IMG/VR virus record: IMGVR_UViG_3300027749_002876
Span: 460,566 to 524,565 of that record
Length of the DNA: 64,000 nt
Direction: 5' to 3' (one strand)
Of the stretch, positions 5,686 to 59,443 are shown piece after piece (the stretch's first letter is position 1; each line of letters opens with the position of its first letter). Below the pieces are notes generated by a model. The model saw nothing but the letters and a program-made list of their open reading frames with translations. It ran no database searches and was not told the DNA's origin. The position numbers and the translations under genes were made by a program.

Positions 5686-6825
5686 TTAACTCAACATGAG
5701 GTTAGCCTCACGGCTAACATAATTGTCATAGTCTTTTGCAAGTAATAACACCGTATCATGTGGTGTGTTAATATTCCTTGCTACACGGGCTCTAACATAC
5801 TTGCTTACATTTTTTGCAAGTAACATCAATGTTTCAGGTGGAGTGCTTCGATTTGATGCTACATTCATTTGAACATCTACGACTGGGTCTTTTGCAAGTA
5901 ACATCAATGTTTTAGGTGGGGTGCTTGGATTTGATGCTACTAACTCTCTAACATCTATATCCTTATCTTTTGCTAGCAACATCAATTGTTCGGATGGAAC
6001 TTCTTCCCGATCGGCAATTAATTTTTTTGTTTTTAATGGCATTTTAGATACATCAATTTTAGAGAAGTCGTAATGTGCTCTAATAGCTGATTGTGTATCC
6101 AAATAACTGCTACTACGTAGACGATAGTTGCCTTCAGGACTATTAGAATTTGCAAACTTACAAAATTTATCAACTACTTCTCTAAAGCCAGCTACATTAG
6201 TTCCGTACGCATTATCTGGAAAAAGTACCATATGATTTTTGTAATAATATGGCTTTATCAATATTCGAGCCAATGGGTTATCAATATTTTTATCATTTTC
6301 TCTAATCAAGTATGCAATGATTGCTCCGTTTTTAATGTCTGCTGGTATATATTTATTATTAACAGTCGGACCGTCATCTAAATCCATACATGAAACCCAA
6401 CCACGGTCTGTACTCATACCTGCAATATCAATCGGATCTCTTGAAAACACCACCTCAAGTGGAGAAGCCTGCCGTGTCGCGGCCCTAATTGGGTCATTTG
6501 CAAATTTATTTAATAACTTTTTATCCTTGATTAATTTTCCAATTTTTATTTTTTTACTTGGATCACTAGATTTTTTTGCCAATCCATGCTTATAGTCATC
6601 AATTTCATACCCAAGATTAGAAATTGCATTTTGTAGTTCTTTTTGAGTGGATGAAATTTCTTTACCTGAATCGGAAGATTGTACTTCTAGAGGTGCATAA
6701 ATCCGAGATTTTCCATTAAACACATTATCGTGTATATTAGCATCGTACTCTGACCCTAAATCTTTGTATAATTTTGCAATTTGTTCAGGTGTTAGTGCTT
6801 CAATTAAAAATTCTGTGGCTCTCAT
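5686..6825 (-). CDS. MRAxEF-leader protein with C-terminal LRV/HEAT-like repeats
   Basis: N-terminus MRATEFLIE; 26-aa repeats LMLLAKD...VASNxxTP; ATAAGTA motif upstream. Confidence 0.7.
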   Translation of the reverse strand: MRATEFLIEALTPEQIAKLYKDLGSEYDANIHDNVFNGKSRIYAPLEVQSSDSGKEISSTQKELQNAISNLGYEIDDYKHGLAKKSSDPSKKIKIGKLIKDKKLLNKFANDPIRAATRQASPLEVVFSRDPIDIAGMSTDRGWVSCMDLDDGPTVNNKYIPADIKNGAIIAYLIRENDKNIDNPLARILIKPYYYKNHMVLFPDNAYGTNVAGFREVVDKFCKFANSNSPEGNYRLRSSSYLDTQSAIRAHYDFSKIDVSKMPLKTKKLIADREEVPSEQLMLLAKDKDIDVRELVASNPSTPPKTLMLLAKDPVVDVQMNVASNRSTPPETLMLLAKNVSKYVRARVARNINTPHDTVLLLAKDYDNYVSREANLMLS

Positions 6826-6833
6826 ATTAGTAC

Positions 6834-7325
6834 TTATGCTTTAAACAAATCCTGGTGCTTAAACCACTTGCGCTTACTGTGAGCACCTTTTAATGAAATT
6901 CTATGTTTCTTTAATTTATCTCGGAATACAAAGAAGCTAGGACCATGACTCATTAGAGGTTGTTTACCTCGTTGAAGTCTTTCCATTCCTTGAATATCCC
7001 ATTGATATTGATGGCACATTTCGTGTGCTAATACTGTGATAAGCCACTGCTTACAGTACCACTTGTCCATCACTCTTATTTTACAGTAGCTCTTAGTCCT
7101 ACTAGGCATTTCTAATGAACCGTAACACATGCCCCAATATTTTCTACAACGTGGCATAACTTCAATCTCAGGCATTATTAGCTTGTTATTAAATATTGTT
7201 TTATTCAGCATCCTATAAAGTGATATAACTTCATCACGGTTGGTTCTATAACAAAGACGTTTTTGATATGTGATTGGTGGCAATTCCTCACGCATAAGGT
7301 CGATAATAGAAGTTTTTTTGAACAT
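6834..7325 (-). CDS. SprT-like zinc metalloprotease
   Basis: VLAHEMCH (HExxH) plus SHGPSF. Confidence 0.8.
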   Translation of the reverse strand: MFKKTSIIDLMREELPPITYQKRLCYRTNRDEVISLYRMLNKTIFNNKLIMPEIEVMPRCRKYWGMCYGSLEMPSRTKSYCKIRVMDKWYCKQWLITVLAHEMCHQYQWDIQGMERLQRGKQPLMSHGPSFFVFRDKLKKHRISLKGAHSKRKWFKHQDLFKA

Positions 7326-7424
7326 AATGTATTTATGATACTATTTAAATACGAATAATACACATATTACGGAAAAAATATATAACTTCTCTATCCGATT
7401 AAATATATGTTTAGGAGAAATCAA

Positions 7425-7745
7425 ATGGAAATTATTATAGGATTGGTCATTTTGGCCGGAGTAGCTTGGTTCTTTTTCATGCGTAATGATAAGAAATCAG
7501 ATGAGGTAGTCACATCTGCTACAGATAACGTCACTGCCCCGTACAAAGTACCAGAACCATCCGCTACTACACCAATACCGTTGGTCGCAGAAGTTATCCC
7601 AGCTGGTACGGAAGCTACAATGGCTGCACCAACTAAAGCTAAAGCACCAGCAAAGCCAAAGGCGCCGGCTAAGCCAAAAGCAACAACTGCTAAAGTTTCG
7701 GCAAAAGCTAAAGCACCTGCAAAGCCAAAAGCACCAAAAGCTTAA
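7425..7745 (+). CDS. Membrane-anchored protein with Lys/Ala/Pro-rich tail
   Basis: AGGAGA RBS before MEIIIGLVILAGVAWFFF TM helix; KAPAKPK repeats. Confidence 0.7.
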   Translation: MEIIIGLVILAGVAWFFFMRNDKKSDEVVTSATDNVTAPYKVPEPSATTPIPLVAEVIPAGTEATMAAPTKAKAPAKPKAPAKPKATTAKVSAKAKAPAKPKAPKA

Positions 7746-8446
7746 TGAATATAGGGTTTGATGTTATTAGCGACCTTAATCTGGCCGCTGAAGATAGCTT
7801 TGATTGGGAAGATAAGGCAACAAGCCTATACCTAATTATAGCAGGAAATATAAGCAATGATTTGCGAGTAATACATCAAACACTGGTTCATCTATCAAAA
7901 TTTTATCAGGGTATCTTTTATATGCCCGGATCGTTAGAACACGATTCAATGCACCTTATAAAAAACAGATACAGAGAAATAGTAGAACTCTGTAGACCAT
8001 TGAAAAAAGTAGCATGTCTATATAGATATGTAGTTATCATCAATGGTGTTGCCGTTCTAGGAGCAAATGGATGGTACGGTAATAAAAATGATTTGACCGA
8101 CTCTTTAGAGAAGCTACATCTACATTCACAGCAAGTAGAAGATGTAACTTATCTGGGTGCTAGTTTAGAAAGACTTCAACTACATCTGGACGTTAAGAAA
8201 ATAATTGTAGTTACACATAGTTCCCCTAGTCCCGAGTTGTTCTTTAAAGAAAATCCACCCGATCTTGATGTTCAAATTCCAATGATGCAAGTATTAGGAA
8301 ATGATTCAGAAAATAAAGTAGTTACTTGGGTTTATGGTAGCTACAACAAAAATGTTGAAACTACTATCAATAACATAAATTATGTAAACAATTCATGTTA
8401 TGATAAAAATCCTTATTGGCCTAAAAGAATTGATGTAGAAGTTTAA
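7745..8446 (+). CDS. Degenerate metallophosphoesterase-fold protein
   Basis: ISDLN / AGNIS / PGSLEH / VVTH correspond to MPP motifs with several metal ligands substituted. Confidence 0.65.
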   Translation: MNIGFDVISDLNLAAEDSFDWEDKATSLYLIIAGNISNDLRVIHQTLVHLSKFYQGIFYMPGSLEHDSMHLIKNRYREIVELCRPLKKVACLYRYVVIINGVAVLGANGWYGNKNDLTDSLEKLHLHSQQVEDVTYLGASLERLQLHLDVKKIIVVTHSSPSPELFFKENPPDLDVQIPMMQVLGNDSENKVVTWVYGSYNKNVETTINNINYVNNSCYDKNPYWPKRIDVEV

Positions 8447-8751
8447 TTAACATCAGCTTCAACTTTAACCTGTAGAGGGAATCCCTGACTACGTGCATCA
8501 AGTGTAACTTCAATCCCGCGCTGTTCTGCAATCTCATATGGTAATACAGCAACTATAGCACTACCCTGTTGATGAATATTTTCAGTTAGTGATGTAGCAG
8601 TATCTTGATTATAATTAAAATACCCGATTAAACTGTTAACCACAAAATTCATACTGGTAACTTCATCGTTCATATAAATGACTCTATAGAGTGGTGGTTC
8701 AGCAAGATTTATGTTTGGGCTGATTTTAATTTTAATATCTGTTTTGGACAT
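8443..8751 (-). CDS. clpS: Clp protease adaptor ClpS
   Basis: PPLYRVIYMNDEVTSMNFVV...IHQQGSAIVAVLPYEIAE...FPLQV. Confidence 0.9.
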   Translation of the reverse strand: MSKTDIKIKISPNINLAEPPLYRVIYMNDEVTSMNFVVNSLIGYFNYNQDTATSLTENIHQQGSAIVAVLPYEIAEQRGIEVTLDARSQGFPLQVKVEADVN

Positions 8752-8815
8752 AGTGTTAAGTTAGTTATATGTGCGAGTGTTACCCCGCACATTTATTTAT
8801 ATAAAATTTATTATA

Positions 8816-16223: not shown

Positions 16224-17545
16224 TTTGCATTATGATACACATCAAACTGTGACCACTGACCTCGCCAGTTTTCATGTTCACTATCCATACCTTCATCACC
16301 AAGTTCTTCACCATCATATACTAATCGTGTGACTACGCTTGTGCCTTGAATATCCCAGTTGAATACTTTCAGTTTCTTAGGTTCAAATGCACCTTCAATA
16401 CTTGTTTGAATACAACTGCCCTTACCACCTTGTGTCCACATCAACCAGTAACCTTTACCTAGATGTTCTGGATAGAGTTCTTCTACTTCTTCTGATGCTT
16501 CCCAACGGCTATCTTCTTCTCCGTGTGCGTCACTAAAGAATGATTCAATGTCGCCGTCATAGATTGTCTCGCCTGCACTATTTTCAATGGTCATACGGGT
16601 ATCGTCTTGGTCAAAGCCCCAGAATGAATGTTTACCTTGATACTCATAATAAGGCAAATCAAATCGTGCCGCCTTAGGAGTTTTGTTCTCATCGTAGTCA
16701 TAATTCTCGTTAAGTGCATCACTCAAGTCATCTTCGTGATCCTCATTACTCCAGTAATCATATTGTTGTTTCTTAATCTTATGTACGCCAATCTCACGTG
16801 TACGACCCCAGATACGAATTGTATATGTATCTTCAGGATAAATTTCTTTTAATGAATCATCATCCTCAACTACAATATTTTCAAAGGGCCATTCAGCAGT
16901 TTCTACGAAATTACTATCTGGAGTGGGCCATTGTGTAGTAGGAGTATCCACTATTAATTTTTCAAACTCCAGTTTGAGTTCTTCTAATCCTGCTTCTAAC
17001 TCAGCAGTATCTACATGTTCTTCTTCCTCTTCATCAAGGGCTTCTTTAGCCCAACGTGCTTCACGTTCTGCTTTTTCTTGTTCTTCTTTAACACCGGCTT
17101 CTGTTAATACGAGATTGCTATCACACATTGGACAAATCTTAACAGCCTCATCTAATTGTTTGCCACCTTTATATACCCAAGACATTTCAGCATCATAACT
17201 TTGACCAACCCATTTACAATTACTACATTTGTGCGTGGGTTTTGGTGGCTCGGGTTCAACATGCCAACTAGATTTGTCACCTAATTCATATGTAACTTCG
17301 TAACCACCTTTGCGGTCAGTCCAACAGTCATCATATTGAAATTCCCATTCAATGTCAACATCATTTTCGTTGGCATCGTCAAGCACTTCTTCATAATCAA
17401 TTTCACCTGCCTCGAGGTCTGCGAGTTTTTGTGCAATCTCATCTTCATCTAAGTCAGGATAGATTTCACTTAATAGTGCTTCATCAATTTCAATAGCATA
17501 TTGTCTATCGTGTTGATGCCATTCATGTTTTACGACTGTTACCAT
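16220..17545 (-). CDS. Highly acidic hypothetical protein with zinc ribbon
   Basis: Very D/E-rich; CSNC...CPMC; AGGAGG RBS. Confidence 0.7.
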   Translation of the reverse strand: MVTVVKHEWHQHDRQYAIEIDEALLSEIYPDLDEDEIAQKLADLEAGEIDYEEVLDDANENDVDIEWEFQYDDCWTDRKGGYEVTYELGDKSSWHVEPEPPKPTHKCSNCKWVGQSYDAEMSWVYKGGKQLDEAVKICPMCDSNLVLTEAGVKEEQEKAEREARWAKEALDEEEEEHVDTAELEAGLEELKLEFEKLIVDTPTTQWPTPDSNFVETAEWPFENIVVEDDDSLKEIYPEDTYTIRIWGRTREIGVHKIKKQQYDYWSNEDHEDDLSDALNENYDYDENKTPKAARFDLPYYEYQGKHSFWGFDQDDTRMTIENSAGETIYDGDIESFFSDAHGEEDSRWEASEEVEELYPEHLGKGYWLMWTQGGKGSCIQTSIEGAFEPKKLKVFNWDIQGTSVVTRLVYDGEELGDEGMDSEHENWRGQWSQFDVYHNAK

Positions 17546-33035: not shown

Positions 33036-33911
33036 ATGAGAATTAACGAATTTATAACAGAGTCTAGTAAGATTTGCCCACAATGTGGAATGAGAGGTTG
33101 CACGTGCAAACCTGGAAAATGTAATTGCAAACCAAAGCCTGGTTATCCAAAACAGGTTGATGAAGCCGCTAATCCAGCACAACAAGCCGCTATAGCTATT
33201 GCTATGAAAAAAGCTGGTAAAAAGCCAAAAAATATGCATGAAGAAGATGAGGGTATGTTTGGTAGATCCAAAAACGATAAACGATATTTAGATAAATTTG
33301 ATCCAACTGAAGTTATGAATATCAGTGATGATCCTAGTAAGGCACATAAAACAACGGGCAAGGGTTCATTAAGAACATCTAAGAAAGATTTAGAATTTGC
33401 ATTTGGACCACCCGGAGAAGATGATACATGGGTTTTAGAATTTAAGAATGGTTTAATTGCCACTATATACCCACAATCTAACAGTGGTGGCATGGATTGG
33501 ATCATAGGTGGTAATCATACAAACACTGAAGATTTTGTACATATGGCTTATTCAGCCGCACTTGATGAAAAACTTGAAGAGGATTGGAACAAGGTCAACC
33601 AGAAAGACAAAACATCTGGTATGAGCCGTAAGGCAGTAAAAGCATATCGTAGAGAAAATCCAGGTAGCAAATTACAAACAGCAGTTACTACTAAACCTAG
33701 TAAATTAAAGCCTGGATCAAAAGCTGCCAAACGCCGTAAGAGTTTTTGTGCTAGAATGAGTGGTAACAAAGGTCCTATGAAAAAGCCTAATGGTAAACCT
33801 ACTCCCAAAGCATTAGCACTACGTAGATGGAATTGTGAGAGTGTAGAGCAAATGGAAGAATTGGTAATGTTAGCAGAACAATTTATCCGCAATCACAAGA
33901 CTAAACTTTAA
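33036..33911 (+). CDS. MRxxEF-leader modular late protein (putative head-internal polyprotein)
   Basis: MRINEFITE; Cys-rich module; AANPAQQAAIAIAMKK module; basic RRKSFCARM...ALRRWNC module; ATAAATA at 32973-32979. Confidence 0.65.
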   Translation: MRINEFITESSKICPQCGMRGCTCKPGKCNCKPKPGYPKQVDEAANPAQQAAIAIAMKKAGKKPKNMHEEDEGMFGRSKNDKRYLDKFDPTEVMNISDDPSKAHKTTGKGSLRTSKKDLEFAFGPPGEDDTWVLEFKNGLIATIYPQSNSGGMDWIIGGNHTNTEDFVHMAYSAALDEKLEEDWNKVNQKDKTSGMSRKAVKAYRRENPGSKLQTAVTTKPSKLKPGSKAAKRRKSFCARMSGNKGPMKKPNGKPTPKALALRRWNCESVEQMEELVMLAEQFIRNHKTKL

Positions 33912-36706: not shown

Positions 36707-37542
36707 TCGTTTTTGAAAAGAGGTACTTGAAGTCTATCACTGTACCGATAACCACGATTCATTGCTTCAATAGCAACATTCTTAGCATTTAAGTTATACA
36801 ATGATTCTACACCACCGCAAGGCATGAAGTATACAGGGCCTCTGAATCCACCATTACGAAATTCTAGTACAGCTTTGTCTGCTTCAATTGCATCTTCACT
36901 AGTAGCAATAACAAACTTAAGATACACAAAGCCAATACTTTCATATTGACGAATGATGTTAGGACAAATTGCTTCACTCCACTTCTCGCCACTGATACTT
37001 AGTTTAGGACTAACACTAAATGTTAATGCATTCTTTTCTCTGTTAATCTTCCATTGTTGTAGATAGATTGATAGGTCTTGACTTAGTTCTTGTGTACCAT
37101 TAGTTTCAAAAGTAATCTCTTTGAGACCTCTCATTTTTTCGTTTGAAAGTAATTCTGGATATGCTCTTTGCCATCCAAGAAGAGGTTCACCACCAGTGAT
37201 AACAAGGTGCTCATCCATCCAGCGACCGTGAGGAAGGATAGTAAGAATAGAGTCAACAATAGAAACGGTACTGAGCATAGGACTAAGATGCTTAAATCTA
37301 GAGTCCCACGAGGCGTAGGAATCGCAACCTGTACTGACAAGCGGTAAGGATTTATAATCTGTATAATCTTGTGCTTTAATCGCAATAACATCTCTTTCAC
37401 TACTCAATTCTCCTTTATTCATGCCGAAGCCACCACACGTAAAATTGCATCCATATGTTCTAAGGAAAATACTTGGTACTCCGATATATCGGCCTTCTCC
37501 TTGTATACTATAAAAAAGTTCACTTACTTTTATGCTTGTCAT
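36694..37542 (-). CDS. queE: 7-carboxy-7-deazaguanine synthase (radical SAM)
   Basis: ELFYSIQGEG, FLRTYGCNFTC...GCDS, ITGGEP, FETNGT, SPKL. Confidence 0.92.
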   Translation of the reverse strand: MTSIKVSELFYSIQGEGRYIGVPSIFLRTYGCNFTCGGFGMNKGELSSERDVIAIKAQDYTDYKSLPLVSTGCDSYASWDSRFKHLSPMLSTVSIVDSILTILPHGRWMDEHLVITGGEPLLGWQRAYPELLSNEKMRGLKEITFETNGTQELSQDLSIYLQQWKINREKNALTFSVSPKLSISGEKWSEAICPNIIRQYESIGFVYLKFVIATSEDAIEADKAVLEFRNGGFRGPVYFMPCGGVESLYNLNAKNVAIEAMNRGYRYSDRLQVPLFKNEWGT

Positions 37543-38083
37543 TAATATGTTCTTTCAAATCATTCATTGATATATAGAGTTTTTCACAAATGAAGCCCTC
37601 TTTCTTTCGTTTACTATCGGATAAGCACCATCCCCTAATAGTTGTCTCATGTACATCGTAATATTTAGCCGCATGCCCCATTGAAGGGAATATACCATCA
37701 GGCGTAGTCACCATCATTTTCCAATTAGGTCTATCATTGTGAATTATACGTTCAATTGAATCTAAAACTGCAGGTACCTTATAGTCTCTTTTTAAGTATT
37801 CTACTGCATTTAACAGATTTTGTAAATCATCTTGGAACTTCCCGAGAGCCATATTACAGTTGGTGCAAAGTAAACCTCTTACTTTTTTTGTAACATGACA
37901 ATGATCCACTGCTAAATCCCTATTACATATATCAAGTTTATTACAAATCGCACAGCCATGATTTTGTTCTACCAACATTGCTTCGTACTGGTCGGCATTA
38001 ATTCCAAAATCTTTCATCAAATCTGACCTTTTTCGGCGTTTGTTAGTTCGTTCTTTACTATTGAGTGTTTTTTGCTTAATCAT
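37520..38083 (-). CDS. Endonuclease VII-like HNH homing endonuclease
   Basis: CAIC...LAVDHCH...VRGLLCTNCNMALG; C-terminal NUMOD/HTH-like segment; TATAAATA and AAGGAG upstream. Confidence 0.85.
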   Translation of the reverse strand: MIKQKTLNSKERTNKRRKRSDLMKDFGINADQYEAMLVEQNHGCAICNKLDICNRDLAVDHCHVTKKVRGLLCTNCNMALGKFQDDLQNLLNAVEYLKRDYKVPAVLDSIERIIHNDRPNWKMMVTTPDGIFPSMGHAAKYYDVHETTIRGWCLSDSKRKKEGFICEKLYISMNDLKEHINDKHKSK

Positions 38084-51588: not shown

Positions 51589-52542
51589 TTAACCGTAGGC
51601 TGCGGCTGCTAATTGGGTTCTAGCAGTACCTACACCAGTAGTGTCACTAGCAACTACACCTGTATTACTTACTAGATTGGTTGTTGATACTGCAACAGTT
51701 GTAGTACCATAACCAAATATAGCGTTATCAGTACCATAACCAGCGGCAGCTAGGTTATACCTAGCTGTACCTACACCAGTGGTGTCAGTGGCCACTACGC
51801 CTGTATTACTTACTAGATTAGTTATGGCTGTTCTACCAGCACCTCCGCTGGTAGTACCAAATCCAAATATAGCTTTATCTGTGCCGTATCCGGCAGCCGC
51901 CAAGGCATTTCTAGCAGTACCTACACCTGTGGTGTCTGTGGCTACAACACCGGCGTTACTTACTAGGTTAGTCACGGCTGTGGATGCACTATTGTCAAGT
52001 CCGTAACCAAATACAGCTTTGTCAGTGCTGTACCTTGCGGCTGCCAGGTTAACTCTGGCAGTACCTACACCTGTGGTATCTGTGGCCACTACTCCTGTAT
52101 TACTTACTAGATTAGTCATTGATACTCTGGCAAAAGAAGAATTATCTCCATACCCAAATATAGCTTTATCTGTACCATAACCAGCAGCCGCCAACGAATA
52201 TCTAGCAGTACCAACACCTGTGGTGTCAGTGGCTACAACACCAGCGTTACTTACTAGATTAGTCATGGATACAACGGTGCTGCCATCAGTAGTCCCGTAA
52301 CCAAATATAGCTTTATCTGTGCCATAGCCTGCGGCTGCTGGTCCGAATCTAGCAGTACCTACTCCTGCAGTATCAGTTGCTACTACACCTGTGTTTGATA
52401 CTAAATTGGTCATTGACACACCGGCAAAAGTAGGATTACCTACATATCCATAACCAAATATAGCTTTATTACCACTCGGTCCGGGAGAAACAGTACATCC
52501 AGCACCAGTAAATGTTATACCACCTGTTATTGTAATTGACAT
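51589..52542 (-). CDS. Six-repeat beta-propeller-like virion/adhesin protein (paralogue 1)
   Basis: 6 x ~48-aa KAIFGYG-var-TNLVSNTGVVATDTTGVGTAR-xx-LAAAGYGTD. Confidence 0.75.
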   Translation of the reverse strand: MSITITGGITFTGAGCTVSPGPSGNKAIFGYGYVGNPTFAGVSMTNLVSNTGVVATDTAGVGTARFGPAAAGYGTDKAIFGYGTTDGSTVVSMTNLVSNAGVVATDTTGVGTARYSLAAAGYGTDKAIFGYGDNSSFARVSMTNLVSNTGVVATDTTGVGTARVNLAAARYSTDKAVFGYGLDNSASTAVTNLVSNAGVVATDTTGVGTARNALAAAGYGTDKAIFGFGTTSGGAGRTAITNLVSNTGVVATDTTGVGTARYNLAAAGYGTDNAIFGYGTTTVAVSTTNLVSNTGVVASDTTGVGTARTQLAAAAYG

Positions 52543-52551
52543 GTTATTCCT

Positions 52552-53121
52552 TTATTGAAAGATATGATGATTCTGTTCCCCGTATATCTTAATATATTTA
52601 CCAGCAAGCATATCTGCCATTGCTTCTATTGGACTACCTGGATAACTATCACCCGGATCAATCATATCTAATTCACCTTGACGGACATGTACCAATTCGT
52701 GGAATACTGTGCGTAGTATATCTACTAGGTTACGATTTTTAGCATATACCCAAATACTATCATCACCCATTTTATGTCCTCCAGTATGATGATTATTTTG
52801 TGCTTCATCAGTATCCATACTGAGTTCAATACGTGGTTTGTTTTTTAGATGTAATCGTTTACATGCCCAATCACAGAACTTATCAACTTCTTGTTGTAGT
52901 TCACTACTATCACCCTCGTCTAGTTTATTCTTAATCCAACTATCCGGACTACGATGGAATTTCTTTACGAACAAGTCATGTAGTGCTTTACCAGTGATAC
53001 TATGTTTGCTAGCAATTCTTCGCATCAATTTATCAATGGTATTATAATCGTGCTTTTCCAAACTAGGCAATTTTCTTGCTAGTTCTTTTGCGGCTGATTC
53101 GTATAGTTCTATTGATTTCAT
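52552..53121 (-). CDS. Late protein with HExxH metallopeptidase motif
   Basis: Start revised to MKSIELYES, 5 nt after ATAAATA; LRTVFHELVH...PIEAMA. Confidence 0.7.
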   Translation of the reverse strand: MKSIELYESAAKELARKLPSLEKHDYNTIDKLMRRIASKHSITGKALHDLFVKKFHRSPDSWIKNKLDEGDSSELQQEVDKFCDWACKRLHLKNKPRIELSMDTDEAQNNHHTGGHKMGDDSIWVYAKNRNLVDILRTVFHELVHVRQGELDMIDPGDSYPGSPIEAMADMLAGKYIKIYGEQNHHIFQ

Positions 53122-53133
53122 ATTAGTATTTAT

Positions 53134-53224
53134 GCTCACTTTTGATTTCACAGTAGCGAATTGTTACATCAGGCCAGCAGCCGGCCCACACTTTATAACG
53201 CAAAGGTCCTAAGGTAGTGTGTTC
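53134..53224 (-). ncRNA. Candidate structured RNA of unknown class
   Basis: GC-richer intergenic: CACACU/AGUGUG, GGCCGG/CUGGCC, UGAU..ACA/UGU..AUCA stems; loop UUCGC can pair with 3' GUGAG. Confidence 0.45.
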
Positions 53225-54037
53225 TTAATCATTCGTTTTACATTTAGCACGTTTACTATTAGTTAATAGACCGTAATCTACTGGCCATTCTTTACCAGGC
53301 TGTAATTCTTTAGCATTAGCAGGGAAATGATACTTTACACCTGCATATTCTTGTATCTGTGCTAATGGTGCACGAAATTGTGTTAAATCATTACCCAAGT
53401 TAACATATGGTTTCTTATGTGGGAATTGCCATCCAGCAACTTCTTTTGTAGTATTATTAATTACAATCTTGTAGTACCCATGAGGCACAACTACTCCGTT
53501 ACCAATCTTCTCATTGCTAGGTCCATAGTATGCACCTACATAGATAGTAAACGGTTGCTTTAATTGTACTGCCCAGCCACGAATACTTGTTTCTAATAGT
53601 TTCCATATACCACGATTTAAACTACCATGTTGCGGATACATATTAGTCATTAAGAAACTTTCGTATTCTACAATTTGACTATAACTTAAATCACCATCTG
53701 GTGCGGCATGACCTTTGTCATAACCTGTAGCTACATAATCATCAGGCTTTGCACCATCTTTAATACTAGCATCAGCAACAAAAGCGTTTGTACGTGGGAA
53801 ACATCCTAATGCGTTTTCTGGTTTTAATGTATATGCTACATAGACTGGAATCTTAGCAGGAGCATCATATGCTACAAGATATGCTTCACGGCATATAGGT
53901 TGTGATGGTCTTTGTGTTTGTGCGAATCCATATGGACTATGTACTTGACATTGTTGTGGTGGTAATGGTATACGTTGATCCCAAGCAAAGGCATTTATTG
54001 ATAGCATTACTGCTAGTATTGTTAATAGTTTTTTCAT
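53225..54037 (-). CDS. Secreted DNA/RNA non-specific endonuclease (NucA/EndoG family)
   Basis: Signal peptide; YDKGHAAP, ESFLMTNMYPQ, LNRGIW..LE, VPHGYYK. Confidence 0.9.
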   Translation of the reverse strand: MKKLLTILAVMLSINAFAWDQRIPLPPQQCQVHSPYGFAQTQRPSQPICREAYLVAYDAPAKIPVYVAYTLKPENALGCFPRTNAFVADASIKDGAKPDDYVATGYDKGHAAPDGDLSYSQIVEYESFLMTNMYPQHGSLNRGIWKLLETSIRGWAVQLKQPFTIYVGAYYGPSNEKIGNGVVVPHGYYKIVINNTTKEVAGWQFPHKKPYVNLGNDLTQFRAPLAQIQEYAGVKYHFPANAKELQPGKEWPVDYGLLTNSKRAKCKTND

Positions 54038-55230
54038 AATAATATATTTTTGTAATCAACGAAATTTGCATGTCTATCTTCTAGACCTTTGCCGGCAGGG
54101 TTAATTTTTTGTGTTACTGCTTTTGTATCGTTGAAGTTATTTATACTAGGTTTGACACGTGTTTGCCAATACCATACAGCAATTTTGGCTGCAACGTCTG
54201 GTCGTTCTGCTAATTCAGGTTGTTGTAGTAGAGGAATATTTAATGCTGTTTGTGCCATGCGATAATTATCACGACCAGTCAATTGAATGAATCCACGACC
54301 ATGGTATTTTTCACCATCTCCGGGTTGTTTGTTACCTAGTATTTTAGCAGTACGTGGTGCAAACTTAGGATCATATTTTTTAGCAAAATAGTTTGGACCC
54401 ATGCTTTTTTCTTTTAACCTACTGAAGTTCCAAGATTCATGTTTAGTTTGACCCATAAGTTGTGCCAATTCAGTGCCAACAATGCCGGCTTGTCTAGCAG
54501 TTTTTTGCATCATTGTTTCTTCTTGTGGATTATTACTTAGTGTGGTTATATTGTTTGCTACAGCTTTAGGTTCAGGTTGTGCCGGTTCATCTTGTTTATT
54601 TTGTGAATTATAATTACCTATCATACTACCCACTGTAGCGGCACCTAAACTACCTAGTGCAAATCCCCTGCGAGATATATCGTCAGCTATTATGTTACGA
54701 TTCTTTACTTTGCTAATCTCAATACTGATTGGTGTATTGGTAGTCATTGCCCTAAAGATTTTTTCAGTTTCACCCTGACCTGGTTTAAGTTTTGCTGATA
54801 TTATGTTGAATCGTAACCTATTCTTTTTAACACCAATGAACTCTCCTATTAATACTTCATAGTTAGGATAGTTAGGTGACAAATCCACTTTGGGATTTTC
54901 TTGTTCTTCTAAATAAAATACATCTTCATCCGGTGATGTTTGTAATGTTGGATGTGCTGTTAATACAATATATGCATTTTCACCATGATTATCTTTTTGC
55001 TTAGACATTGCTACTCCTAAATCAGGAGTTCTAACTACAAAAGTAATATATGGCATTTTTATTAGTTCATGTCCACGTTTAGTTTCTAATTTATGTAATA
55101 CTCGAAGGACTTTTTCTATAGGAATATTACGTTTTGAACCGTCACTTCTATCATTAATGAAGTGTTTGCTCACAACTAAATATCCGTCTGCAAAGGGTAT
55201 TTCTTTATTAATAAATTCTGTTGCTCTCAT
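54034..55230 (-). CDS. MRAxEF-leader modular protein with C-terminal GH19 chitinase/lysozyme
   Basis: MRATEFINKE; AQLMGQTKHES, YHGRGFIQLTGRDNY, AVWYW, TQKIN...GLEDR. Confidence 0.85.
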   Translation of the reverse strand: MRATEFINKEIPFADGYLVVSKHFINDRSDGSKRNIPIEKVLRVLHKLETKRGHELIKMPYITFVVRTPDLGVAMSKQKDNHGENAYIVLTAHPTLQTSPDEDVFYLEEQENPKVDLSPNYPNYEVLIGEFIGVKKNRLRFNIISAKLKPGQGETEKIFRAMTTNTPISIEISKVKNRNIIADDISRRGFALGSLGAATVGSMIGNYNSQNKQDEPAQPEPKAVANNITTLSNNPQEETMMQKTARQAGIVGTELAQLMGQTKHESWNFSRLKEKSMGPNYFAKKYDPKFAPRTAKILGNKQPGDGEKYHGRGFIQLTGRDNYRMAQTALNIPLLQQPELAERPDVAAKIAVWYWQTRVKPSINNFNDTKAVTQKINPAGKGLEDRHANFVDYKNILL

Positions 55231-55231
55231 A

Positions 55232-57595
55232 TTAGCTCATTATAGGTAATACTTCAATGTCCGTACCTTGATCGTACCCATTGTCTCTTAGCCATTGAAT
55301 AGCTACACGATTAGCATCACGTTGAACATTGCCTATGCCACTAAAACGATGTACTTCACGTCCGTCTGCCATTACTTTCCAAGCACCGGTGAATGAACCA
55401 GGTATTTGTCTTTGTTGTTGAATAGCATTAGTGCTATCTGGGGCGGGTGCAGGTTGATCCATACGTGATAGACCATACCCTCGTCTATCAATACCCTGAT
55501 CCAATAACCAAGCTTGAGCTTTTTCTCTCGCATCTTCAACTGATGTAGCTTGGAATGTATAAACTATACTTTGGTCTGCTGTTCTGTATAGTTTGTAATC
55601 TTGTGTTTCGCCACTTGGTTCATTAGTAGCACGAATTGGTTGTGCTAGTATAGGTTCACTATCACCAACACGTCTTATACCAAATATGTCTCTAGCTTGT
55701 CTTGCTGGAAATCTGTGTGGACCGTGTTCAAGATAATCATTTAGTCGAATCAATGCTTCTCTATCATTAGTAATGCCTTCAGCATCCTCTACCTTTCTAT
55801 TAGTATCCAAATTAAATATTTCATATTTTGGTTTATCATCTTTAGGTTCTTCAAACTTACGAACTGGATAAACAGCGGCAGCAGTTAATGCACCTAAACG
55901 AATGTTCCATTCATCTGATGCTTTTTGTAGTGCTTCTTCTTTACTTGTAGCAACAACTTCAATACTTGCACCACTACGGCCACGACCTTCTTTATCAACA
56001 CGATACCAATACTTTTTGCCAACTTCATTGTCAGCCTTTACTTTACGTTCTATCTGTGCTTGTTTAACAAAGCTACGTAATGCAGCCTTTGGTAACTCAC
56101 CTGCGGCATACTTAGCAAAGTATTGAATCGTATCTGTATTATCTTTACTTGGCTCTAATAACTTATAAAGTTTTTTTAGATATTCTTTTCTATACTTCTG
56201 TGGGTCAACTGCGGCATCCAGTGCTACAACAAATCGTAACAGTGTGTTCTCAATCTTAGGTATATCAGTATCCAACCAATCACCTCCCGGGCTACGAAAC
56301 TCAATGTAACCATCTTTAGTATTGATACTTGTATATTTGGCTGTTGAACCACTATGAACTAGTTTGCTAGCAATATCACTTAGTCCACTTTTCATTCCAT
56401 CTAACAACTTTTTAGCGTTTGCTGGATTTTCTCTAATGTTATCTTTAACTTGTTTCAACGCACTCTTGCAAAAAGTGTTACCTTCACGGTCGAACTCTTT
56501 CAATATATATTCGTCACCTAATAGTAATGCTAGTTTAACATAGTCAAGCTTTTCTCTACTGAAGTCAGGAACACTTACGTTGATATGTAAGCCGGTACTA
56601 TCATTCGTATAGCAACCTGTTTTCTTAGCCCAAGCAACAACTTTGTTGAAGTCAGTTATCATTTCATCTATTGGCATTGGTGGACTTACAAACTCTAATC
56701 CAGCAGAACTGTAATCATCTGGCTCTAAGCTACCATCAGGTTCAACTACATAGTGACCTGCTTCTCTACGAGCACCGTGATAACGTTCGCTTGTATTGAC
56801 TGGCTTACCAATCATTCTACTGAACTCATCACCAACATCATCAACGCTTAAGTCACCACCATTGTCGGGATAAAACCAATGTGGCCAAGTAATATCATAG
56901 TTACTTTCAACGTCTTGCATTGTATAAAGACCTTCACTTTCTAACCAATCATTTTCGTCTGGCCAATCAGTTTCATCCATCCACTTTTCACGTGCATTGT
57001 CATACAATCTAGATTGTTCATCCCATTCTTCTTCAACAAACTGGTCGAACTTTTCACTTGCTAAATCGTGTGCTTCTTTCCAGTGTTTCCAAGCTTCATT
57101 GCCTTCTGTTTCACTGCGTTTAGATATCTTACCTGCTTTGTTCGCCGCTTCCTTTTGTTCATCTGTTAAGCCTAATTGGTCATACGCTTCATCAAGTGCG
57201 GCATCTTCATCAAACTCACCTTCACTTTCAATGTATTCACGTAGATAATCTTTACCTTCACTATCCCATTGTTCGCTACGTCTTTCATCTGCCCATTCGT
57301 GATAACCTTCAGTTAGCTCATCAACTAAACTATCTACTTCTCTAAGACCATTGTAGTTACGGTCATAGAAAAAGTTGCGTATGTTTTGAATACTACCAGC
57401 ACTTTCATCACTATCATAGTCAGCTTCTGGATCTCCGTCACCTTCTTCTCGTTTAACGTTTGGAACAATCATCTCAAATTCCATACCAGCCTGAGCACCA
57501 GTCTTAGCAGCCTCTTGCTTTAACCGTGTAGGATTCATTGCTACTTCGTCAAGTATCTCTGTATCTTCTAATATTATAAAGTCTGTTGCTCTCAT
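55232..57595 (-). CDS. MRAxEF-leader putative amidoligase (COOH-NH2 ligase) protein
   Basis: MRATDFIILE; GMEFE, EPDGSL, GLEFVSP, TNDSTGLHIN, KYTSIN, IEFRSPGG. Confidence 0.8.
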   Translation of the reverse strand: MRATDFIILEDTEILDEVAMNPTRLKQEAAKTGAQAGMEFEMIVPNVKREEGDGDPEADYDSDESAGSIQNIRNFFYDRNYNGLREVDSLVDELTEGYHEWADERRSEQWDSEGKDYLREYIESEGEFDEDAALDEAYDQLGLTDEQKEAANKAGKISKRSETEGNEAWKHWKEAHDLASEKFDQFVEEEWDEQSRLYDNAREKWMDETDWPDENDWLESEGLYTMQDVESNYDITWPHWFYPDNGGDLSVDDVGDEFSRMIGKPVNTSERYHGARREAGHYVVEPDGSLEPDDYSSAGLEFVSPPMPIDEMITDFNKVVAWAKKTGCYTNDSTGLHINVSVPDFSREKLDYVKLALLLGDEYILKEFDREGNTFCKSALKQVKDNIRENPANAKKLLDGMKSGLSDIASKLVHSGSTAKYTSINTKDGYIEFRSPGGDWLDTDIPKIENTLLRFVVALDAAVDPQKYRKEYLKKLYKLLEPSKDNTDTIQYFAKYAAGELPKAALRSFVKQAQIERKVKADNEVGKKYWYRVDKEGRGRSGASIEVVATSKEEALQKASDEWNIRLGALTAAAVYPVRKFEEPKDDKPKYEIFNLDTNRKVEDAEGITNDREALIRLNDYLEHGPHRFPARQARDIFGIRRVGDSEPILAQPIRATNEPSGETQDYKLYRTADQSIVYTFQATSVEDAREKAQAWLLDQGIDRRGYGLSRMDQPAPAPDSTNAIQQQRQIPGSFTGAWKVMADGREVHRFSGIGNVQRDANRVAIQWLRDNGYDQGTDIEVLPIMS

Positions 57596-57615: not shown

Positions 57616-58566
57616 TTAACCGTAGGCTGCGGCTGCTAAACTATCCCTAGCAGTACCTACACCTGTAGTATCAGTAGCAACAACGCCTGTGTTTGATACT
57701 AAATTGGTTATTGCAGTTACTGAGCCACTATTACCATATCCAAATATAGCTTTATCAGCTCCATACCCGGCTGCTGAAAGAGCATACCTAGTAGTACCTA
57801 CACCTGTAGTATTTGTAGCAACAACACCGGTGTTACTTACTAAGTTGGTTGTTGCGGAAGGACCTACACTTGTGACATTTCCATACCCAAATATTGCTTT
57901 ATCAGTACCATACCCTGCGGCTGCTAGATAATATCTAGCAAGACCAACTCCTGTTGTATCTGTAGCAACTACTCCTGCATTACTTACTAAATTAGTCATT
58001 GACACTCCGCTACCGACAAGACCATATCCAAATATAGCTTTGTCAGTACCATAACCTGCAGCCGCAAGGGCAAACCTAGCAGTACCAACACCAGTGGTAT
58101 CTATGGCAACTACACCAGTGTTTGATACTAGATTGGTCATTGACAATCCGGTAAAACTTATGTTAGCACCATATCCAAATATAGCTTTATCGGTGCCATA
58201 TCCAGCGGCTGCAAGATAACCTCGCACTGTACCTACACCCGTTGTATCGGTAGCTATTACGCCTGTGTTTGATACTAAGTTAGTTAGTGAATATGCAACG
58301 GTATAACTAGCATTAAACCCATATCCAAATATAGCTTTGTCAGTACCATAACCTGCTGCCGCAAGGCCTTCTCTAGCAGTACCCACACCTGTAACATCAT
58401 TACCAACTACACCCGTGTTAGATACTAGATTAGTTATTGCTGTAACTGTACCGGTAGTTCCATATCCAAAGATAGCCTTTTGAGTGCCACCACCTCCACC
58501 CCCGCCACCAGGTGTAAACGTCCATCCGCCACTAAATGTTAATCCACCTGTTATTGTTACTGTCAT
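57616..58566 (-). CDS. Six-repeat beta-propeller-like virion/adhesin protein (paralogue 2)
   Basis: Same 6-repeat framework as 51589-52542; poly-Gly linker. Confidence 0.75.
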   Translation of the reverse strand: MTVTITGGLTFSGGWTFTPGGGGGGGGTQKAIFGYGTTGTVTAITNLVSNTGVVGNDVTGVGTAREGLAAAGYGTDKAIFGYGFNASYTVAYSLTNLVSNTGVIATDTTGVGTVRGYLAAAGYGTDKAIFGYGANISFTGLSMTNLVSNTGVVAIDTTGVGTARFALAAAGYGTDKAIFGYGLVGSGVSMTNLVSNAGVVATDTTGVGLARYYLAAAGYGTDKAIFGYGNVTSVGPSATTNLVSNTGVVATNTTGVGTTRYALSAAGYGADKAIFGYGNSGSVTAITNLVSNTGVVATDTTGVGTARDSLAAAAYG

Positions 58567-58567
58567 A

Positions 58568-59443
58568 TTATGTTGCCTTTTTCAACTTATTCCATTTATC
58601 ATATATATAGTTTTTCAACTCTATTGTATTTTTAATTTCATTGTCGTTCATGTATTTAATCAACTTCACAGCACTAGCTCTATCTCCTGCATCTGGCTTA
58701 CGTGCGTTACTTAAATCAACACCTATGTTATGATCGCCTGTAGTATCGTGATACCATAACAGGTTCTTTAGTTGTCTCTTTGCTCTATCGCTTAGATATT
58801 CCTCTTTGTCTTTTTCAATCAACTCAATCCAAGGCTTAACAAAGTCAGTTGGCTTACGAGTAGCACCTCTAGTTGGTTGACCCTTCAATACATCTTTGGC
58901 TTGACTTGGCTGAACACTCTTACGTGTATCTAATAATCTCCAAGCACTCTCATTTGTATAAAGATATGCTGGTATATCTTTTTGTTTAGCTGTTATCATT
59001 ATTTGCCGTGTTTGTGGGCTACGATATTCATTTTGTTCTTTTAATAAGATATGTATCTCTGTAACAGGTGTCATTGGTATACTTGGCTCTTTGCTGAACA
59101 CTCTATCTTCTGATTCACGTGTTCTAGTACCATCACTTTTTAACCAAGCACTATTCCAATAGTCTATTGGCTTAACAATGTATCTACTGTTGAACCAATC
59201 ACCGTTCATTTTAAACATTACACCACCCGTACCAACATATCTATGATAGTCACCAGTCGGTGTTCTTGTTAAACTTAAGAAGTATGGATAACCTTTTGGT
59301 GCATAATCTTCTTCGCTACTATTACCTGTTACACTTGCTAGTTCAAAGTTACCTGATTGTAGAATCTTTAATGCGGCATTGGTACTAGTGTAATGAAATA
59401 CTACGCTGGTTGCACGTTCTATTAAAAACTCGTTTGCTCTCAT
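58568..59443 (-). CDS. MRAxEF-leader protein, possible ADP-ribosyltransferase fold
   Basis: MRANEFLIE; VFHYT, FLSLTR, RESEDR. Confidence 0.5.
   Translation of the reverse strand: MRANEFLIERATSVVFHYTSTNAALKILQSGNFELASVTGNSSEEDYAPKGYPYFLSLTRTPTGDYHRYVGTGGVMFKMNGDWFNSRYIVKPIDYWNSAWLKSDGTRTRESEDRVFSKEPSIPMTPVTEIHILLKEQNEYRSPQTRQIMITAKQKDIPAYLYTNESAWRLLDTRKSVQPSQAKDVLKGQPTRGATRKPTDFVKPWIELIEKDKEEYLSDRAKRQLKNLLWYHDTTGDHNIGVDLSNARKPDAGDRASAVKLIKYMNDNEIKNTIELKNYIYDKWNKLKKAT

What the first reader, a model, noticed from the sequence alone, without database searches (positions are those of the whole stretch)
54631..54690. Internal twin-arginine signal hidden in front of the GH19 lysozyme domain
Seen: residues 181-200 read IADDI-SRRGF-ALGSLGAATV, an S-R-R-x-F Tat-like motif plus hydrophobic stretch, in mid-protein just after an acidic site and before a linker and the GH19 domain. 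Known: Tat exports folded proteins and needs a near-N-terminal signal. Inference: proteolytic maturation exposes the signal, so a pre-folded, co-injected muralytic enzyme can be routed to the periplasm by the host Tat system.
Basis: partly seen in the sequence, partly recalled or inferred. Interest (0 to 1): 0.68.

Follow-up and report, generated by a model that had tools for sequence, protein, structure and literature searches.

The report
Internal Tat-type signal in phage lysozyme
A giant phage's cell-wall-cutting enzyme carries, in mid-protein, a conserved bacterial "twin-arginine" export signal that sits at the very start of the protein in related phages, which suggests these phages use the host's Tat export system, something not previously described.

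Summary
Residues 181-200 of the 398-aa ORF at window 54034-55230 (-) read as stated. They lie between a folded beta module and a disordered linker followed by a GH19 muramidase.

The motif is not chance:
- RR and F(+2) are invariant in 107 of 107 distinct homologue contexts.
- Most homologues, though not this copy, pass the curated Tat-signal HMMs.
- In minimal relatives (209-225 aa) the same signal is N-terminal, directly after a 9-residue leader, M-R-A-T-E-F-x-x-E.
- The same leader plus Tat signal heads an unrelated M48 peptidase. This genome's copy of that peptidase also has it internally.

The leader resembles the T4 capsid-targeting propeptide. The phage (524 kb, T4-type head genes) encodes a T4-type prohead protease. 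Every module border in the family reads (L/I/V)-x-E, the T4 protease motif.

- It is untested.
- This copy has Asp, not Glu, at the junction, and no AxA site.
- Tat does accept internal signals (FecR).
- Sister clades replace SRRGF by GWKDW.

Most likely this is a working Tat-type signal-anchor that places the GH19 domain in the periplasm.

The parts
54034..55230 (-). Whole gene: 398-aa multi-module protein (leader, domain A, beta module, Tat-type signal, linker, GH19).
   Evidence: ORF list. More than 1000 metagenomic homologues. It starts one base after the stop of the upstream gene and overlaps the downstream gene by 4 nt.
55201..55230 (-). N-terminal leader, residues 1-10 (M-R-A-T-E-F-I-N-K-E): candidate capsid-targeting propeptide.
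   Evidence: Nine ORFs of the genome start with this motif and there are no internal matches in 243,776 aa. It resembles T4 IPII/IPIII M-K-T-Y-Q-E-F-I-A-E. Related phages carry arrays of genes with this start.
54907..55200 (-). Domain A, residues 11-108: a variable inserted module, absent from about 290-aa homologues.
   Evidence: Alignment A1. The Atlas structure search finds the same shape at the start of other phage proteins. AF2 confidence is low because few sequences carry it.
54904..54915 (-). Module border L-E-E108 | Q109: candidate prohead-protease site.
   Evidence: The same border, (I/L/V)-x-E | Q-E-N-P-K-V-D-L, follows the leader directly in short homologues and follows other inserts in long ones.
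54691..54906 (-). Beta module, residues 109-180: small Sm/SH3-like barrel of unknown function.
   Evidence: pLDDT 75-89 in the full model and 81.6 when folded alone. The best structural matches have Z <= 4.6 and are uninformative.
54661..54690 (-). Junction and twin-arginine motif, residues 181-190 (I-A-D-D-I-S-R-R-G-F).
   Evidence: D184, R187, R188 and F190 are invariant in A1. RR and F are kept in 107/107 contexts. The junction has Asp where 96/107 contexts have Glu.
54616..54666 (-). h-region, residues 189-205: 17 uncharged residues, 65% Gly/Ala/Ser/Thr, mean Kyte-Doolittle 1.3.
   Evidence: It is much less hydrophobic than the Sec-type signal of the neighbouring nuclease (2.23). There is no AxA site after it, whereas 58/107 homologue contexts have one.
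54529..54615 (-). Disordered Asn/Gln/Pro-rich linker, residues 206-234.
   Evidence: pLDDT <50 up to residue 226. It is hypervariable in alignment A1.
54037..54528 (-). GH19 muramidase/chitinase-fold domain, residues 235-398.
   Evidence: PF00182 and PHROG 181 endolysin. Foldseek top hits are phage GH19 endolysins 7r6s, 9ms7 and 4ok7. H264-E265-S266, E274 and G311-R-G-F-I-Q-L-T are invariant.
55232..57595 (-). Upstream gene: 787-aa amidoligase-domain protein with the same leader (M-R-A-T-D-F-I-I-L-E).
53225..54037 (-). Downstream gene: DNA/RNA non-specific endonuclease with a classical Sec-type signal and no leader motif. It serves as a contrast to the Tat-type signal.

Best explanation
The segment is a real Tat-type (twin-arginine) membrane-targeting signal. 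It belongs to a mobile leader cassette: a 9-residue M-R-x-x-E-F-x-x-E start, then D-(L/I)-S-R-R-G-F-L-(G/K)-G, then a Gly/Ala-rich h-region. A lineage of T4-core jumbo phages puts this cassette in front of enzymes that act outside the cytoplasm: a GH19 muramidase, an M48 peptidase and others.

In minimal relatives the cassette is the N-terminus. In the window's gene, about 175 residues (domain A and a beta module) have been inserted between the leader and the signal, so the signal is internal.

Most likely the host Tat machinery recognises it and threads the folded GH19 domain into the periplasm, while the upstream part stays on the cytoplasmic side. In this copy the signal probably stays uncut at both ends, for two reasons: Asp instead of Glu at the junction, and no AxA site. 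It would then work as an internal signal-anchor, as in FecR, tethering the muramidase to the outer face of the inner membrane. This might follow removal of domain A at L-E-E108|Q109.

Shown: the motif, its conservation, its N-terminal counterparts, the fold layout, and the protease gene.
Inferred: Tat dependence, topology, cleavage, and when in the infection cycle it acts.
For: - RR, F(+2) and S/T(-1) are effectively invariant across 107 distinct contexts, while the linker drifts.
- 15/25 and 16/25 homologues match TIGR01409 and PF10518 at E<=1.
- Minimal forms carry the same signal at residues 11-30, and 8 of 10 pass the TIGR01409 cut-off.
- The same leader plus signal heads an unrelated M48 peptidase family.
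- This genome's M48 copy has the signal internally at residue ~390 and passes TIGR01409 (17.2 bits against a 16.7 cut-off for the whole protein). As an excised fragment it also passes PF10518 (24.1 against 22.7).
- Four more internal RR signals occur in other long ORFs of related loci.
- The h-region is weakly hydrophobic (1.3 against 2.23 for the Sec signal next door), which is typical of Tat signals.
- AF2 shows a folded module, then a disordered signal and linker, then folded GH19. This is the layout of class V Tat substrates (FecR).
- On the GH19 tree, an internal-RR protein (L041, RR at 395) nests with support 99/88 inside an N-terminal-RR clade. N-terminal fusion is therefore tolerated repeatedly.
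Against: - The window's own segment fails both Tat HMMs. It has A instead of L at +3 and no K/G-G after it.
- Sister clades use G-W-K-D-W instead of S-R-R-G-F, and the two types swap on the tree. A Tat-independent route can therefore serve the same cargo.
- The host is unknown; the only hint is a Crocinitomicaceae MAG contig. The phage encodes no TatA or TatC.
- No export, topology or proteomic data exist, and no TatP/SignalP run was possible.
- The known internal Tat signal (FecR) is one regulator family, not an enzyme cargo.
Confidence: 0.45

Rival explanations
1. The protein is packed into the capsid through its N-terminal leader. The prohead protease cuts it immediately before D-I-S-R-R, so the packed product starts with the Tat signal. 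It is ejected with the DNA into the next host's cytoplasm and then exported by that host's Tat system to act on the cell wall from the periplasm.
For: - The leader resembles the T4 capsid-targeting sequence and is strictly N-terminal in nine ORFs.
- Genes with this start form variable arrays in related phages, like the T4 internal-protein locus.
- A Peptidase_S77 prohead protease is present, and the capsid protein keeps L-A-E|S opposite T4 gp23 L-T-E|A.
- All module borders read (L/I/V)-x-E: after the leader, before the beta module, before D-(L/I)-S-R-R, and before G-W-K-D-W. This matches the T4 gp21 motif L/I-x-E.
- Free shuffling of unrelated modules on one polypeptide is easiest to explain as a polyprotein.
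- Proteins fused to the T4 capsid-targeting sequence are delivered in working form into recipient cells.
- Only leader-bearing cargo has Tat-type signals, whereas the leaderless nuclease next door has a Sec signal.
Against: - This copy has I-A-D at the junction, and Asp at P1 blocks T4 processing. The leader itself ends I-N-K-E rather than I-x-E.
- There is no virion proteome. The nearest cultured jumbo phages (PA5oct, Phosso, Vibrio 2.275.O; capsid protein 64-67% identical) lack the leader.
- In minimal forms the signal is already exposed on the primary product, so export could happen in the producing cell without any protease.
- The benefit of an early periplasmic muramidase is unclear.
Confidence: 0.25
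2. A Tat-independent membrane segment: a weakly hydrophobic Gly/Ala-rich signal-anchor, possibly releasable like a SAR domain. It would be inserted by Sec/YidC or spontaneously. The two arginines would merely satisfy the positive-inside rule.
For: - The h-region is 65% Gly/Ala/Ser/Thr, like SAR domains, with a weak glycine-zipper hit.
- The window copy fails the Tat HMMs.
- The W-K class keeps the helix but has a single Lys and no RR, and it swaps with the RR class on the tree.
Against: - A generic anchor would tolerate K/R exchange and would not hold S/T-R-R-x-F-L in 107/107 contexts.
- Nor would it reproduce the full S-R-R-G-F-L-K-G consensus on a second cargo.
- Curated Tat models are passed by most relatives.
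- SAR release would require moving a 180-residue, highly charged N-terminal part across the membrane.
Confidence: 0.2
3. Not a membrane signal at all: a flexible Gly/Ala-rich linker whose conserved R-R-G-F contacts something else, such as the scaffold core, DNA or the GH19 domain, while the enzyme acts as an ordinary soluble or virion-bound lysin.
For: The region is disordered in the model. Internal proteins of T4 are basic and contact DNA (established knowledge).
Against: - The segment matches Tat-signal models, sits N-terminally in minimal forms, and often ends in A-x-A.
- The genome already has a signal-less GH19 between tail-fibre-like genes.
Confidence: 0.05

Closest known systems
Bacterial Tat signal peptides (TIGR01409 / PF10518), including those of the exported cell-wall amidases AmiA and AmiC of E. 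coli (the latter from my own knowledge)
   Same: S-R-R-x-F core and a weakly hydrophobic Gly/Ala-rich h-region in front of a cofactor-less cell-wall hydrolase. Relatives pass the curated models and often end in A-x-A.
   Different: The signal is phage-encoded. It starts at residue 186 of the primary product, not near the N-terminus. This copy is HMM-negative and has no A-x-A. It is always preceded by an acidic (L/I/V)-x-E/D junction.
Class V Tat substrates: FecR-type internal, uncleaved Tat signal behind a globular cytoplasmic domain (PMC13673990; PMC12036975; Passmore et al. 2020)
   Same: A folded N-terminal module, then an internal twin-arginine helix, then a folded C-terminal domain to be placed in the periplasm. 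If domain A is removed at residue 108, RR would lie at positions 79-80 of the product, as in FecR.
   Different: No sequence relationship to FecR was seen. The cargo is an enzyme, not a sigma regulator. Many relatives do have a signal-peptidase site.
T4 internal proteins (IPI, IPII, IPIII, Alt) with a capsid-targeting sequence cut by gp21 at L/I-x-E (PMC9026906)
   Same: A ~10-residue N-terminal motif ending in Glu that is shared by otherwise unrelated proteins, variable gene arrays, and a T4-type prohead protease and capsid protein in the genome.
   Different: The motif is one residue shorter and was not detected by any model. There is no packaging evidence. T4 internal proteins have no export signal and act in the cytoplasm.
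SAR (signal-anchor-release) endolysins such as P1 Lyz and phage 21 R (from my own knowledge)
   Same: A muralytic enzyme behind a Gly/Ala-rich, weakly hydrophobic helix that could tether it to the membrane.
   Different: SAR domains are N-terminal, Sec-dependent and preceded by a few basic residues. Here there is a twin-arginine consensus and up to about 400 preceding residues.
Polyvalent proteins of phages and conjugative elements (Iyer et al. 2017, cited in PMC7824862)
   Same: Several unrelated effector modules on one polypeptide, in a phage, shuffled between relatives, and thought to be delivered with the DNA and processed.
   Different: The polyvalent proteins as I recall them (from my own knowledge; that paper was not read here) are much larger and built around other hallmark domains. 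No Tat-type signals or (L/I/V)-x-E borders have been reported for them, as far as the library search shows.

Membership tests
Tat signal peptide (TIGR01409 / PF10518) | Consensus S/T-R-R-x-F-L-K | tested here: inconclusive
   The window has S-R-R-G-F-A-L, keeping S, R, R and F but not L-K. Relatives have S-R-R-G-F-L-G, and the M48 cargo has S-R-R-G-F-L-K.
Tat signal peptide (TIGR01409 / PF10518) | Score above the curated cut-off of the family models | tested here: not met
   There is no hit for the window protein or its excised fragment. The cut-off is met by 8/10 minimal homologues and by the genome's M48 protein. 15-16 of 25 aligned homologues matched at E<=1.
Tat signal peptide (TIGR01409 / PF10518) | Uncharged, moderately hydrophobic h-region of about 12-20 residues after RR | tested here: met
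   17 uncharged residues with mean Kyte-Doolittle 1.3.
Tat signal peptide (TIGR01409 / PF10518) | Location at the N-terminus of the precursor | tested here: not met
   RR is at residues 187-188 of 398. It is met in minimal relatives, where RR is at 12-13.
Tat signal peptide (TIGR01409 / PF10518) | A-x-A signal-peptidase site in the c-region | tested here: not met
   There is none in the window copy. It is present in 58/107 homologue contexts.
Tat signal peptide (TIGR01409 / PF10518) | Export depends on TatABC and on the arginine pair | not testable with these tools
   This needs tat+ versus tatC-deleted strains and RR-to-KK variants.
Class V (FecR-like) Tat substrate | Internal uncleaved RR helix between a folded cytoplasmic domain and a folded exported domain | tested here: met
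   AF2 shows a beta module at 112-180 (pLDDT 75-89), a disordered stretch at 182-226, and GH19 at 227-398. There is no A-x-A site. This is an architectural match only.
Class V (FecR-like) Tat substrate | Homology to FecR or anti-sigma regulators | tested here: not met
   Pfam and NCBIfam scans give only GH19. It may work like FecR but is not a member.
T4-type capsid-targeted internal protein | About 10-residue N-terminal propeptide ending in (L/I)-x-E | tested here: inconclusive
   The window reads M-R-A-T-E-F-I-N-K-E (Glu at 10, but I-N-K-E). Relatives and four other leader-bearing ORFs of this genome, one of them the upstream neighbour, end I/L/V-x-E at 7-9. T4 reads M-K-T-Y-Q-E-F-I-A-E.
T4-type capsid-targeted internal protein | T4-type prohead protease and scaffold-based head assembly in the same genome | tested here: met
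   Peptidase_S77 at G000:353734-354165. Gp23-family capsid protein with an aligned L-x-E site.
T4-type capsid-targeted internal protein | Presence in the virion and removal of the propeptide | not testable with these tools
   The phage is uncultured. Cultured relatives lack the leader.
SAR endolysin | N-terminal, weakly hydrophobic Gly/Ala-rich helix with a short tail | tested here: not met
   The composition fits (65% G/A/S/T). However, the helix is preceded by 188 residues here and, even in minimal forms, by 12 residues of which 6 are charged.
Glycoside hydrolase family 19 | GH19 profile match, fold and catalytic glutamates | tested here: met
   PF00182 E 2.3e-10. Foldseek matches phage GH19 endolysins at E 2.5e-07 to 6.7e-06. 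E265 and E274 are invariant.

The most novel reading that the evidence does not exclude
These jumbo phages pack polyproteins into the capsid through a short N-terminal leader. The prohead protease cuts them at (L/I/V)-x-E borders. This releases, among other pieces, a muramidase or a peptidase that now begins with a Tat (or W-K type) membrane signal. After ejection into the next host, the host's own Tat system sends these pieces to the periplasm. That would be a virion-delivered route for periplasmic effectors, and a reason why a post-translational, folded-protein pathway is used instead of Sec.
Probability: 0.25. Interest if true: 0.85.

Novelty: new variant of a known kind. Interest (0 to 1): 0.66.

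Why it matters
- Full-text searches of the held library found no paper describing a phage lysin or virion protein that uses the Tat pathway. Phage endolysin export is currently explained by holins, Sec signals or SAR domains.
- A conserved Tat-type cassette on two unrelated envelope-acting enzymes, in a widespread group of uncultured jumbo phages, would add a fourth route.
- Internal Tat signals are so far known from FecR and from Sec/Tat dual-inserted membrane proteins. Here they recur in at least four cargo families, which gives a natural set of test cases for how Tat handles N-terminal extensions.
- The strict (L/I/V)-x-E borders tie capsid targeting, prohead proteolysis and host export into one scheme that can be tested with ordinary laboratory strains.
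- Practically, N-terminus-only signal predictors will miss these signals, so such proteins are mis-annotated as cytoplasmic.

Tried and rejected
- Internal translation start giving an N-terminal signal: the only nearby Met (M162) is not conserved (R, L or K in homologues) and has no well-spaced Shine-Dalgarno sequence. Rejected as a family-wide mechanism.
- Phage-encoded Tat: no TatC or TatA in the genome.
- Wider similarity between the two adjacent M-R-A-T genes: none beyond the first 7 residues.
- T4 late promoter T-A-T-A-A-A-T-A: 4 sites against 8.8 expected, so it does not help with timing.
- Cultured relatives with virion proteomes: PA5oct, Phosso and Vibrio 2.275.O share the capsid protein (64-67% identity) but have no M-R-x-x-E-F leader. 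Only Phosso has one ordinary N-terminal Tat-signal ORF.
- Phage-record search for the N-terminal half: no hit before residue 196.
- Function of domain A and the beta module: the Atlas and PDB shape searches gave only phage hypotheticals and weak Sm/SH3-like matches (Z <= 4.6).
- Host identification: only a phage-like contig binned in a Crocinitomicaceae MAG, which is too weak to use.
- Not used: the reads tools, complex prediction and the search of protein representatives.
- No other genetic code was needed.
- The length window of the search for homologous proteins was handled by querying the M48 domain separately and by scanning contigs, which has no length limit.
Full report
**1. The observation**

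The finding lies in the ORF at window 54034-55230 on the minus strand, which encodes 398 aa. Residue 181 starts at 54690 and residue 200 ends at 54631.

Pfam places GH19 at 253-363 (E 2.3e-10), and PHROGs calls residues 243-398 an endolysin. An AlphaFold2 model built on 25 homologues gives four zones:
- residues 1-111: low confidence, because few sequences carry this part;
- residues 112-180: a well-predicted beta module (pLDDT 75-89);
- residues 182-226: disordered (pLDDT <50);
- residues 227-398: a GH19 fold.

The best Foldseek matches of the GH19 part are phage GH19 endolysins (7r6s, 9ms7, SPN1S 4ok7). H264-E265-S266, E274 and the G-R-G-F-I-Q-L-T block are invariant, so the enzyme looks active. 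The description [quoted passage not shown] is therefore accurate.

**2. Is it more than chance?**

- In all ORFs >=100 aa of the genome, [ST]RRxF followed by 13 apolar residues occurs once, against 0.005 expected from shuffles.
- The looser [ST]RRxF[LAIVMG] occurs only twice in the six-frame translation of 524 kb. The second case is again an internal, textbook Tat signal.
- The database search gave 1122 homologues and the viral-contig scan gave 79 loci. Among 107 distinct sequence contexts of the RR type, RR is kept in 107, F at +2 in 107, S/T at -1 in 104 and G at +1 in 102. The linker behind it varies freely.
- 15 of 25 aligned homologues match TIGR01409 and 16 of 25 match PF10518 at E<=1.
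- The window's own copy (F-A-L-G-S instead of F-L-G-G) matches neither model. It is a divergent member.

**3. Context**

The window is the last 64 kb of a 524,565-bp IMG/VR virus record with 36.7% G+C. The record has T4-type head genes:
- a Peptidase_S77 prohead protease;
- a coiled-coil, scaffold-like ORF;
- a Gp23-family capsid protein.

The capsid protein is 64-67% identical to those of the cultured jumbo phages PA5oct, Vibrio 2.275.O and Sinorhizobium Phosso. It aligns L-A-E43|S with the known gp21 site L-T-E65|A of T4 gp23. The protease therefore probably keeps the T4 specificity, L/I-x-E (PMC9026906).

The phage encodes no TatA or TatC. A second, signal-less GH19 of 206 aa lies between two tail-fibre-like genes.

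**4. The key comparative result**

In related loci the same GH19 enzyme exists as a minimal protein of 209-225 aa. Its N-terminus is M-R-A-T-E-F-x-x-E, followed at once by D-(L/I)-S-R-R-G-F-L-G-G, a Gly/Ala-rich stretch, and often A-x-A (L029, L033, L035/36, L058, L061, L065, L073, L078). Eight of ten such minimal forms pass the curated TIGR01409 cut-off, including two from the M48 peptidase family of section 6. In those phages the signal is therefore an ordinary N-terminal Tat signal.

Long forms carry the same junction internally, with RR at 86, 106, 156, 172, 187, 212, 271 or 395. The window's protein is one of these. Between the leader and the signal it has domain A (residues 11-108) and the beta module (109-180).

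A maximum-likelihood tree of the GH19 domains shows that N-terminal and internal positions interleave, with at least four changes forced by well-supported branches. For example, L041 (RR at 395) nests at 99/88 inside a clade with N-terminal signals.

**5. A sister leader type**

Twenty-two distinct contexts replace S-R-R-G-F by G-W-K-D-W (one Lys) in front of the same kind of Gly/Ala-rich helix. These also interleave with the RR type on the tree. The general requirement is therefore a membrane-targeting helix. Twin arginines are one of two interchangeable solutions.

**6. The cassette is mobile**

The genome's second hit (G000 6765-8804, 680 aa) has four parts: a nucleotidyltransferase-like domain, DUF6934, the junction P-V-D-E|D-I-S-R-R-G-F-L-K-G with its h-region, and an M48 H-E-x-x-H peptidase. 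It passes TIGR01409, and as a fragment it passes PF10518.

Its homologues include minimal forms that begin M-R-A-T-E-F-I-V-E-D-I-S-R-R-G-F-L-K-G. This is the same composite leader on an unrelated cargo.

Four further long ORFs in related loci have internal RR signals at 243, 275, 327 and 365.

**7. The N-terminal leader**

Nine ORFs of the genome begin M-[RK]-x-x-[DE]-[FILV]-..-E, and the pattern never occurs internally in 243,776 residues. In related phages the GH19 gene sits in an array of genes that nearly all start this way, just upstream of the DNA polymerase and with variable content.

T4 IPII and IPIII begin M-K-T-Y-Q-E-F-I-A-E. This decapeptide is the capsid-targeting sequence that gp21 removes after I-A-E. 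The resemblance, the array structure and the T4-type head module make a capsid-targeting propeptide the best reading. It remains an inference.

**8. Module borders**

Every border in the family reads (L/I/V)-x-E:
- after the leader (F-I-T-E, F-V-T-E, I-I-A-E and others);
- before the beta module (Y-L-E-E|Q-E-N-P-K in the window, F-I-T-E|Q, I-V-E|Q, L-V-E|E);
- before D-(L/I)-S-R-R (Glu at P1 in 96/107, V/I/L at P3 in 106/107);
- before G-W-K-D-W (L-E-E, V-D-E, I-D-E).

The borders fall in low-confidence, presumably exposed, stretches of the model. This is what a polyprotein cut by a T4-type prohead protease would look like.

The window's clade is the exception at the signal border. It reads I-A-D (11/107 contexts), and in T4 Asp at P1 blocks cleavage. 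It also lacks A-x-A. If domain A is removed at E108, the product would be beta module, internal signal and GH19, with RR 79-80 residues from its start.

**9. What is known**

The recent Tat review lists five substrate classes. Class V has an internal, uncleaved Tat signal behind a globular cytoplasmic domain, and FecR is the example. FecR's RR is at 79-80 and its insertion is tatABC-dependent. The premise that Tat needs a near-N-terminal signal is therefore too strict, and proteolytic exposure is not required in principle.

Full-text searches found no paper that links Tat to export of a phage endolysin, or to ejection proteins or jumbo phages. The nearest is a speculation about Mu gp25.

**10. 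Conclusion**

The segment is a genuine Tat-type signal that has become internal through N-terminal module insertion. Most likely it places the GH19 domain in the periplasm. In this copy it probably acts as an uncleaved internal signal-anchor.

It explains the leader, the borders and the module shuffling. It also explains why the leaderless nuclease next door has a Sec signal. Each of its steps is still untested, and this copy fits it least well.

A Tat-independent anchor remains possible because of the W-K sister type.

**11. Limits**

- No TatP or SignalP was available; the curated HMMs served as proxies.
- Many of the 107 contexts are close relatives, so the counts are not independent events. 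About twenty distinct junction types support the pattern.
- The host is unknown.
- The reads tools, complex prediction and the representative-library search were not used.

Noticed in passing
G000 6765-8804 (+), outside the window (locus L004:6765-8804): A second protein with an internal textbook Tat signal (D-I-S-R-R-G-F-L-K-G at about residue 390). It follows a nucleotidyltransferase-like domain and DUF6934, and precedes an M48 H-E-x-x-H peptidase. Minimal homologues start with the same M-R-A-T-E-F leader plus Tat signal.
   Followed up: yes
window 5686-6825 (-), 33036-33911 (+), 55232-57595 (-), 58568-59443 (-); G000 16227-16802, 36970-37866, 258302-258676, 258673-259068: A family of nine ORFs that share only the N-terminal motif M-[RK]-x-x-[DE]-[FILV]-..-E. 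Their cargoes are LRV repeats, DUF6321, an amidoligase, GH19 and unknowns. Related phages carry variable arrays of such genes upstream of the DNA polymerase, reminiscent of the T4 internal-protein locus.
   Followed up: partly
L004 (G000) residues 618-680 of the M48 protein, nt about 8616-8804: A 63-residue C-terminal module is shared at about 80% identity by more than 100 otherwise different metagenomic proteins (nucleotidyltransferase, DUF6934, deaminase, GNAT-annotated). It may be a second targeting or docking module.
   Followed up: partly
window 53225-54037 (-): A DNA/RNA non-specific endonuclease with a classical Sec-type signal (M-K-K-L-L-T-I-L-A-V-M-L-S-I-N-A-F-A). It overlaps the GH19 stop by 4 nt and is conserved next to the GH19 gene in related loci. 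It is probably a periplasmic nuclease.
   Followed up: partly
window 51589-52542 (-), 57616-58566 (-); also G000 about 357815 onward: Paralogous Gly-rich proteins built of about 45-residue repeats (K-A-I-F-G-Y-G ... T-N-L-V-S-N-T-G-V-V-A-T-D-T-T-G-V-G-T-A-R). They have no family match and are interspersed with the leader-bearing genes.
   Followed up: no
L043-L050, L062-L064, L074-L087, L091: A sister leader type in which (L/I/V)-x-E | G-W-K-D-W replaces the twin-arginine motif in front of the same Gly/Ala-rich helix. It occurs both N-terminally and deep inside long ORFs, and it swaps with the RR type on the GH19 tree.
   Followed up: partly
L029 (RR at 243), L033 (RR at 365), L034 (RR at 275), L050 (RR at 327): Further long ORFs of related phages with internal RR signals. 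In three of them the signal is followed by a poly-Gly tract and an unknown domain.
   Followed up: no
G000 202213-202833 (-) (locus L005:4213-4833): A second GH19 of 206 aa without any signal, lying between two large tail-fibre-like genes. It is a candidate ordinary endolysin or tail lysin.
   Followed up: partly
L102:4269-4736 (-) (Sinorhizobium phage Phosso, PV764938.1): A cultured 469-kb phage of the same capsid lineage encodes a 155-aa hypothetical protein with an ordinary N-terminal Tat signal (TIGR01409, 19.3 bits).
   Followed up: partly
window 52552-53151 (-) and G000 16227-16802 (+): Paralogues that share a K-L-P-S-L-E-K-H-D-Y-x-T-(I/L)-D-K-L block (weak DUF5329 hit). The same block recurs next to the GH19 gene in many related loci, sometimes at the start of 838-aa proteins.
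   Followed up: no
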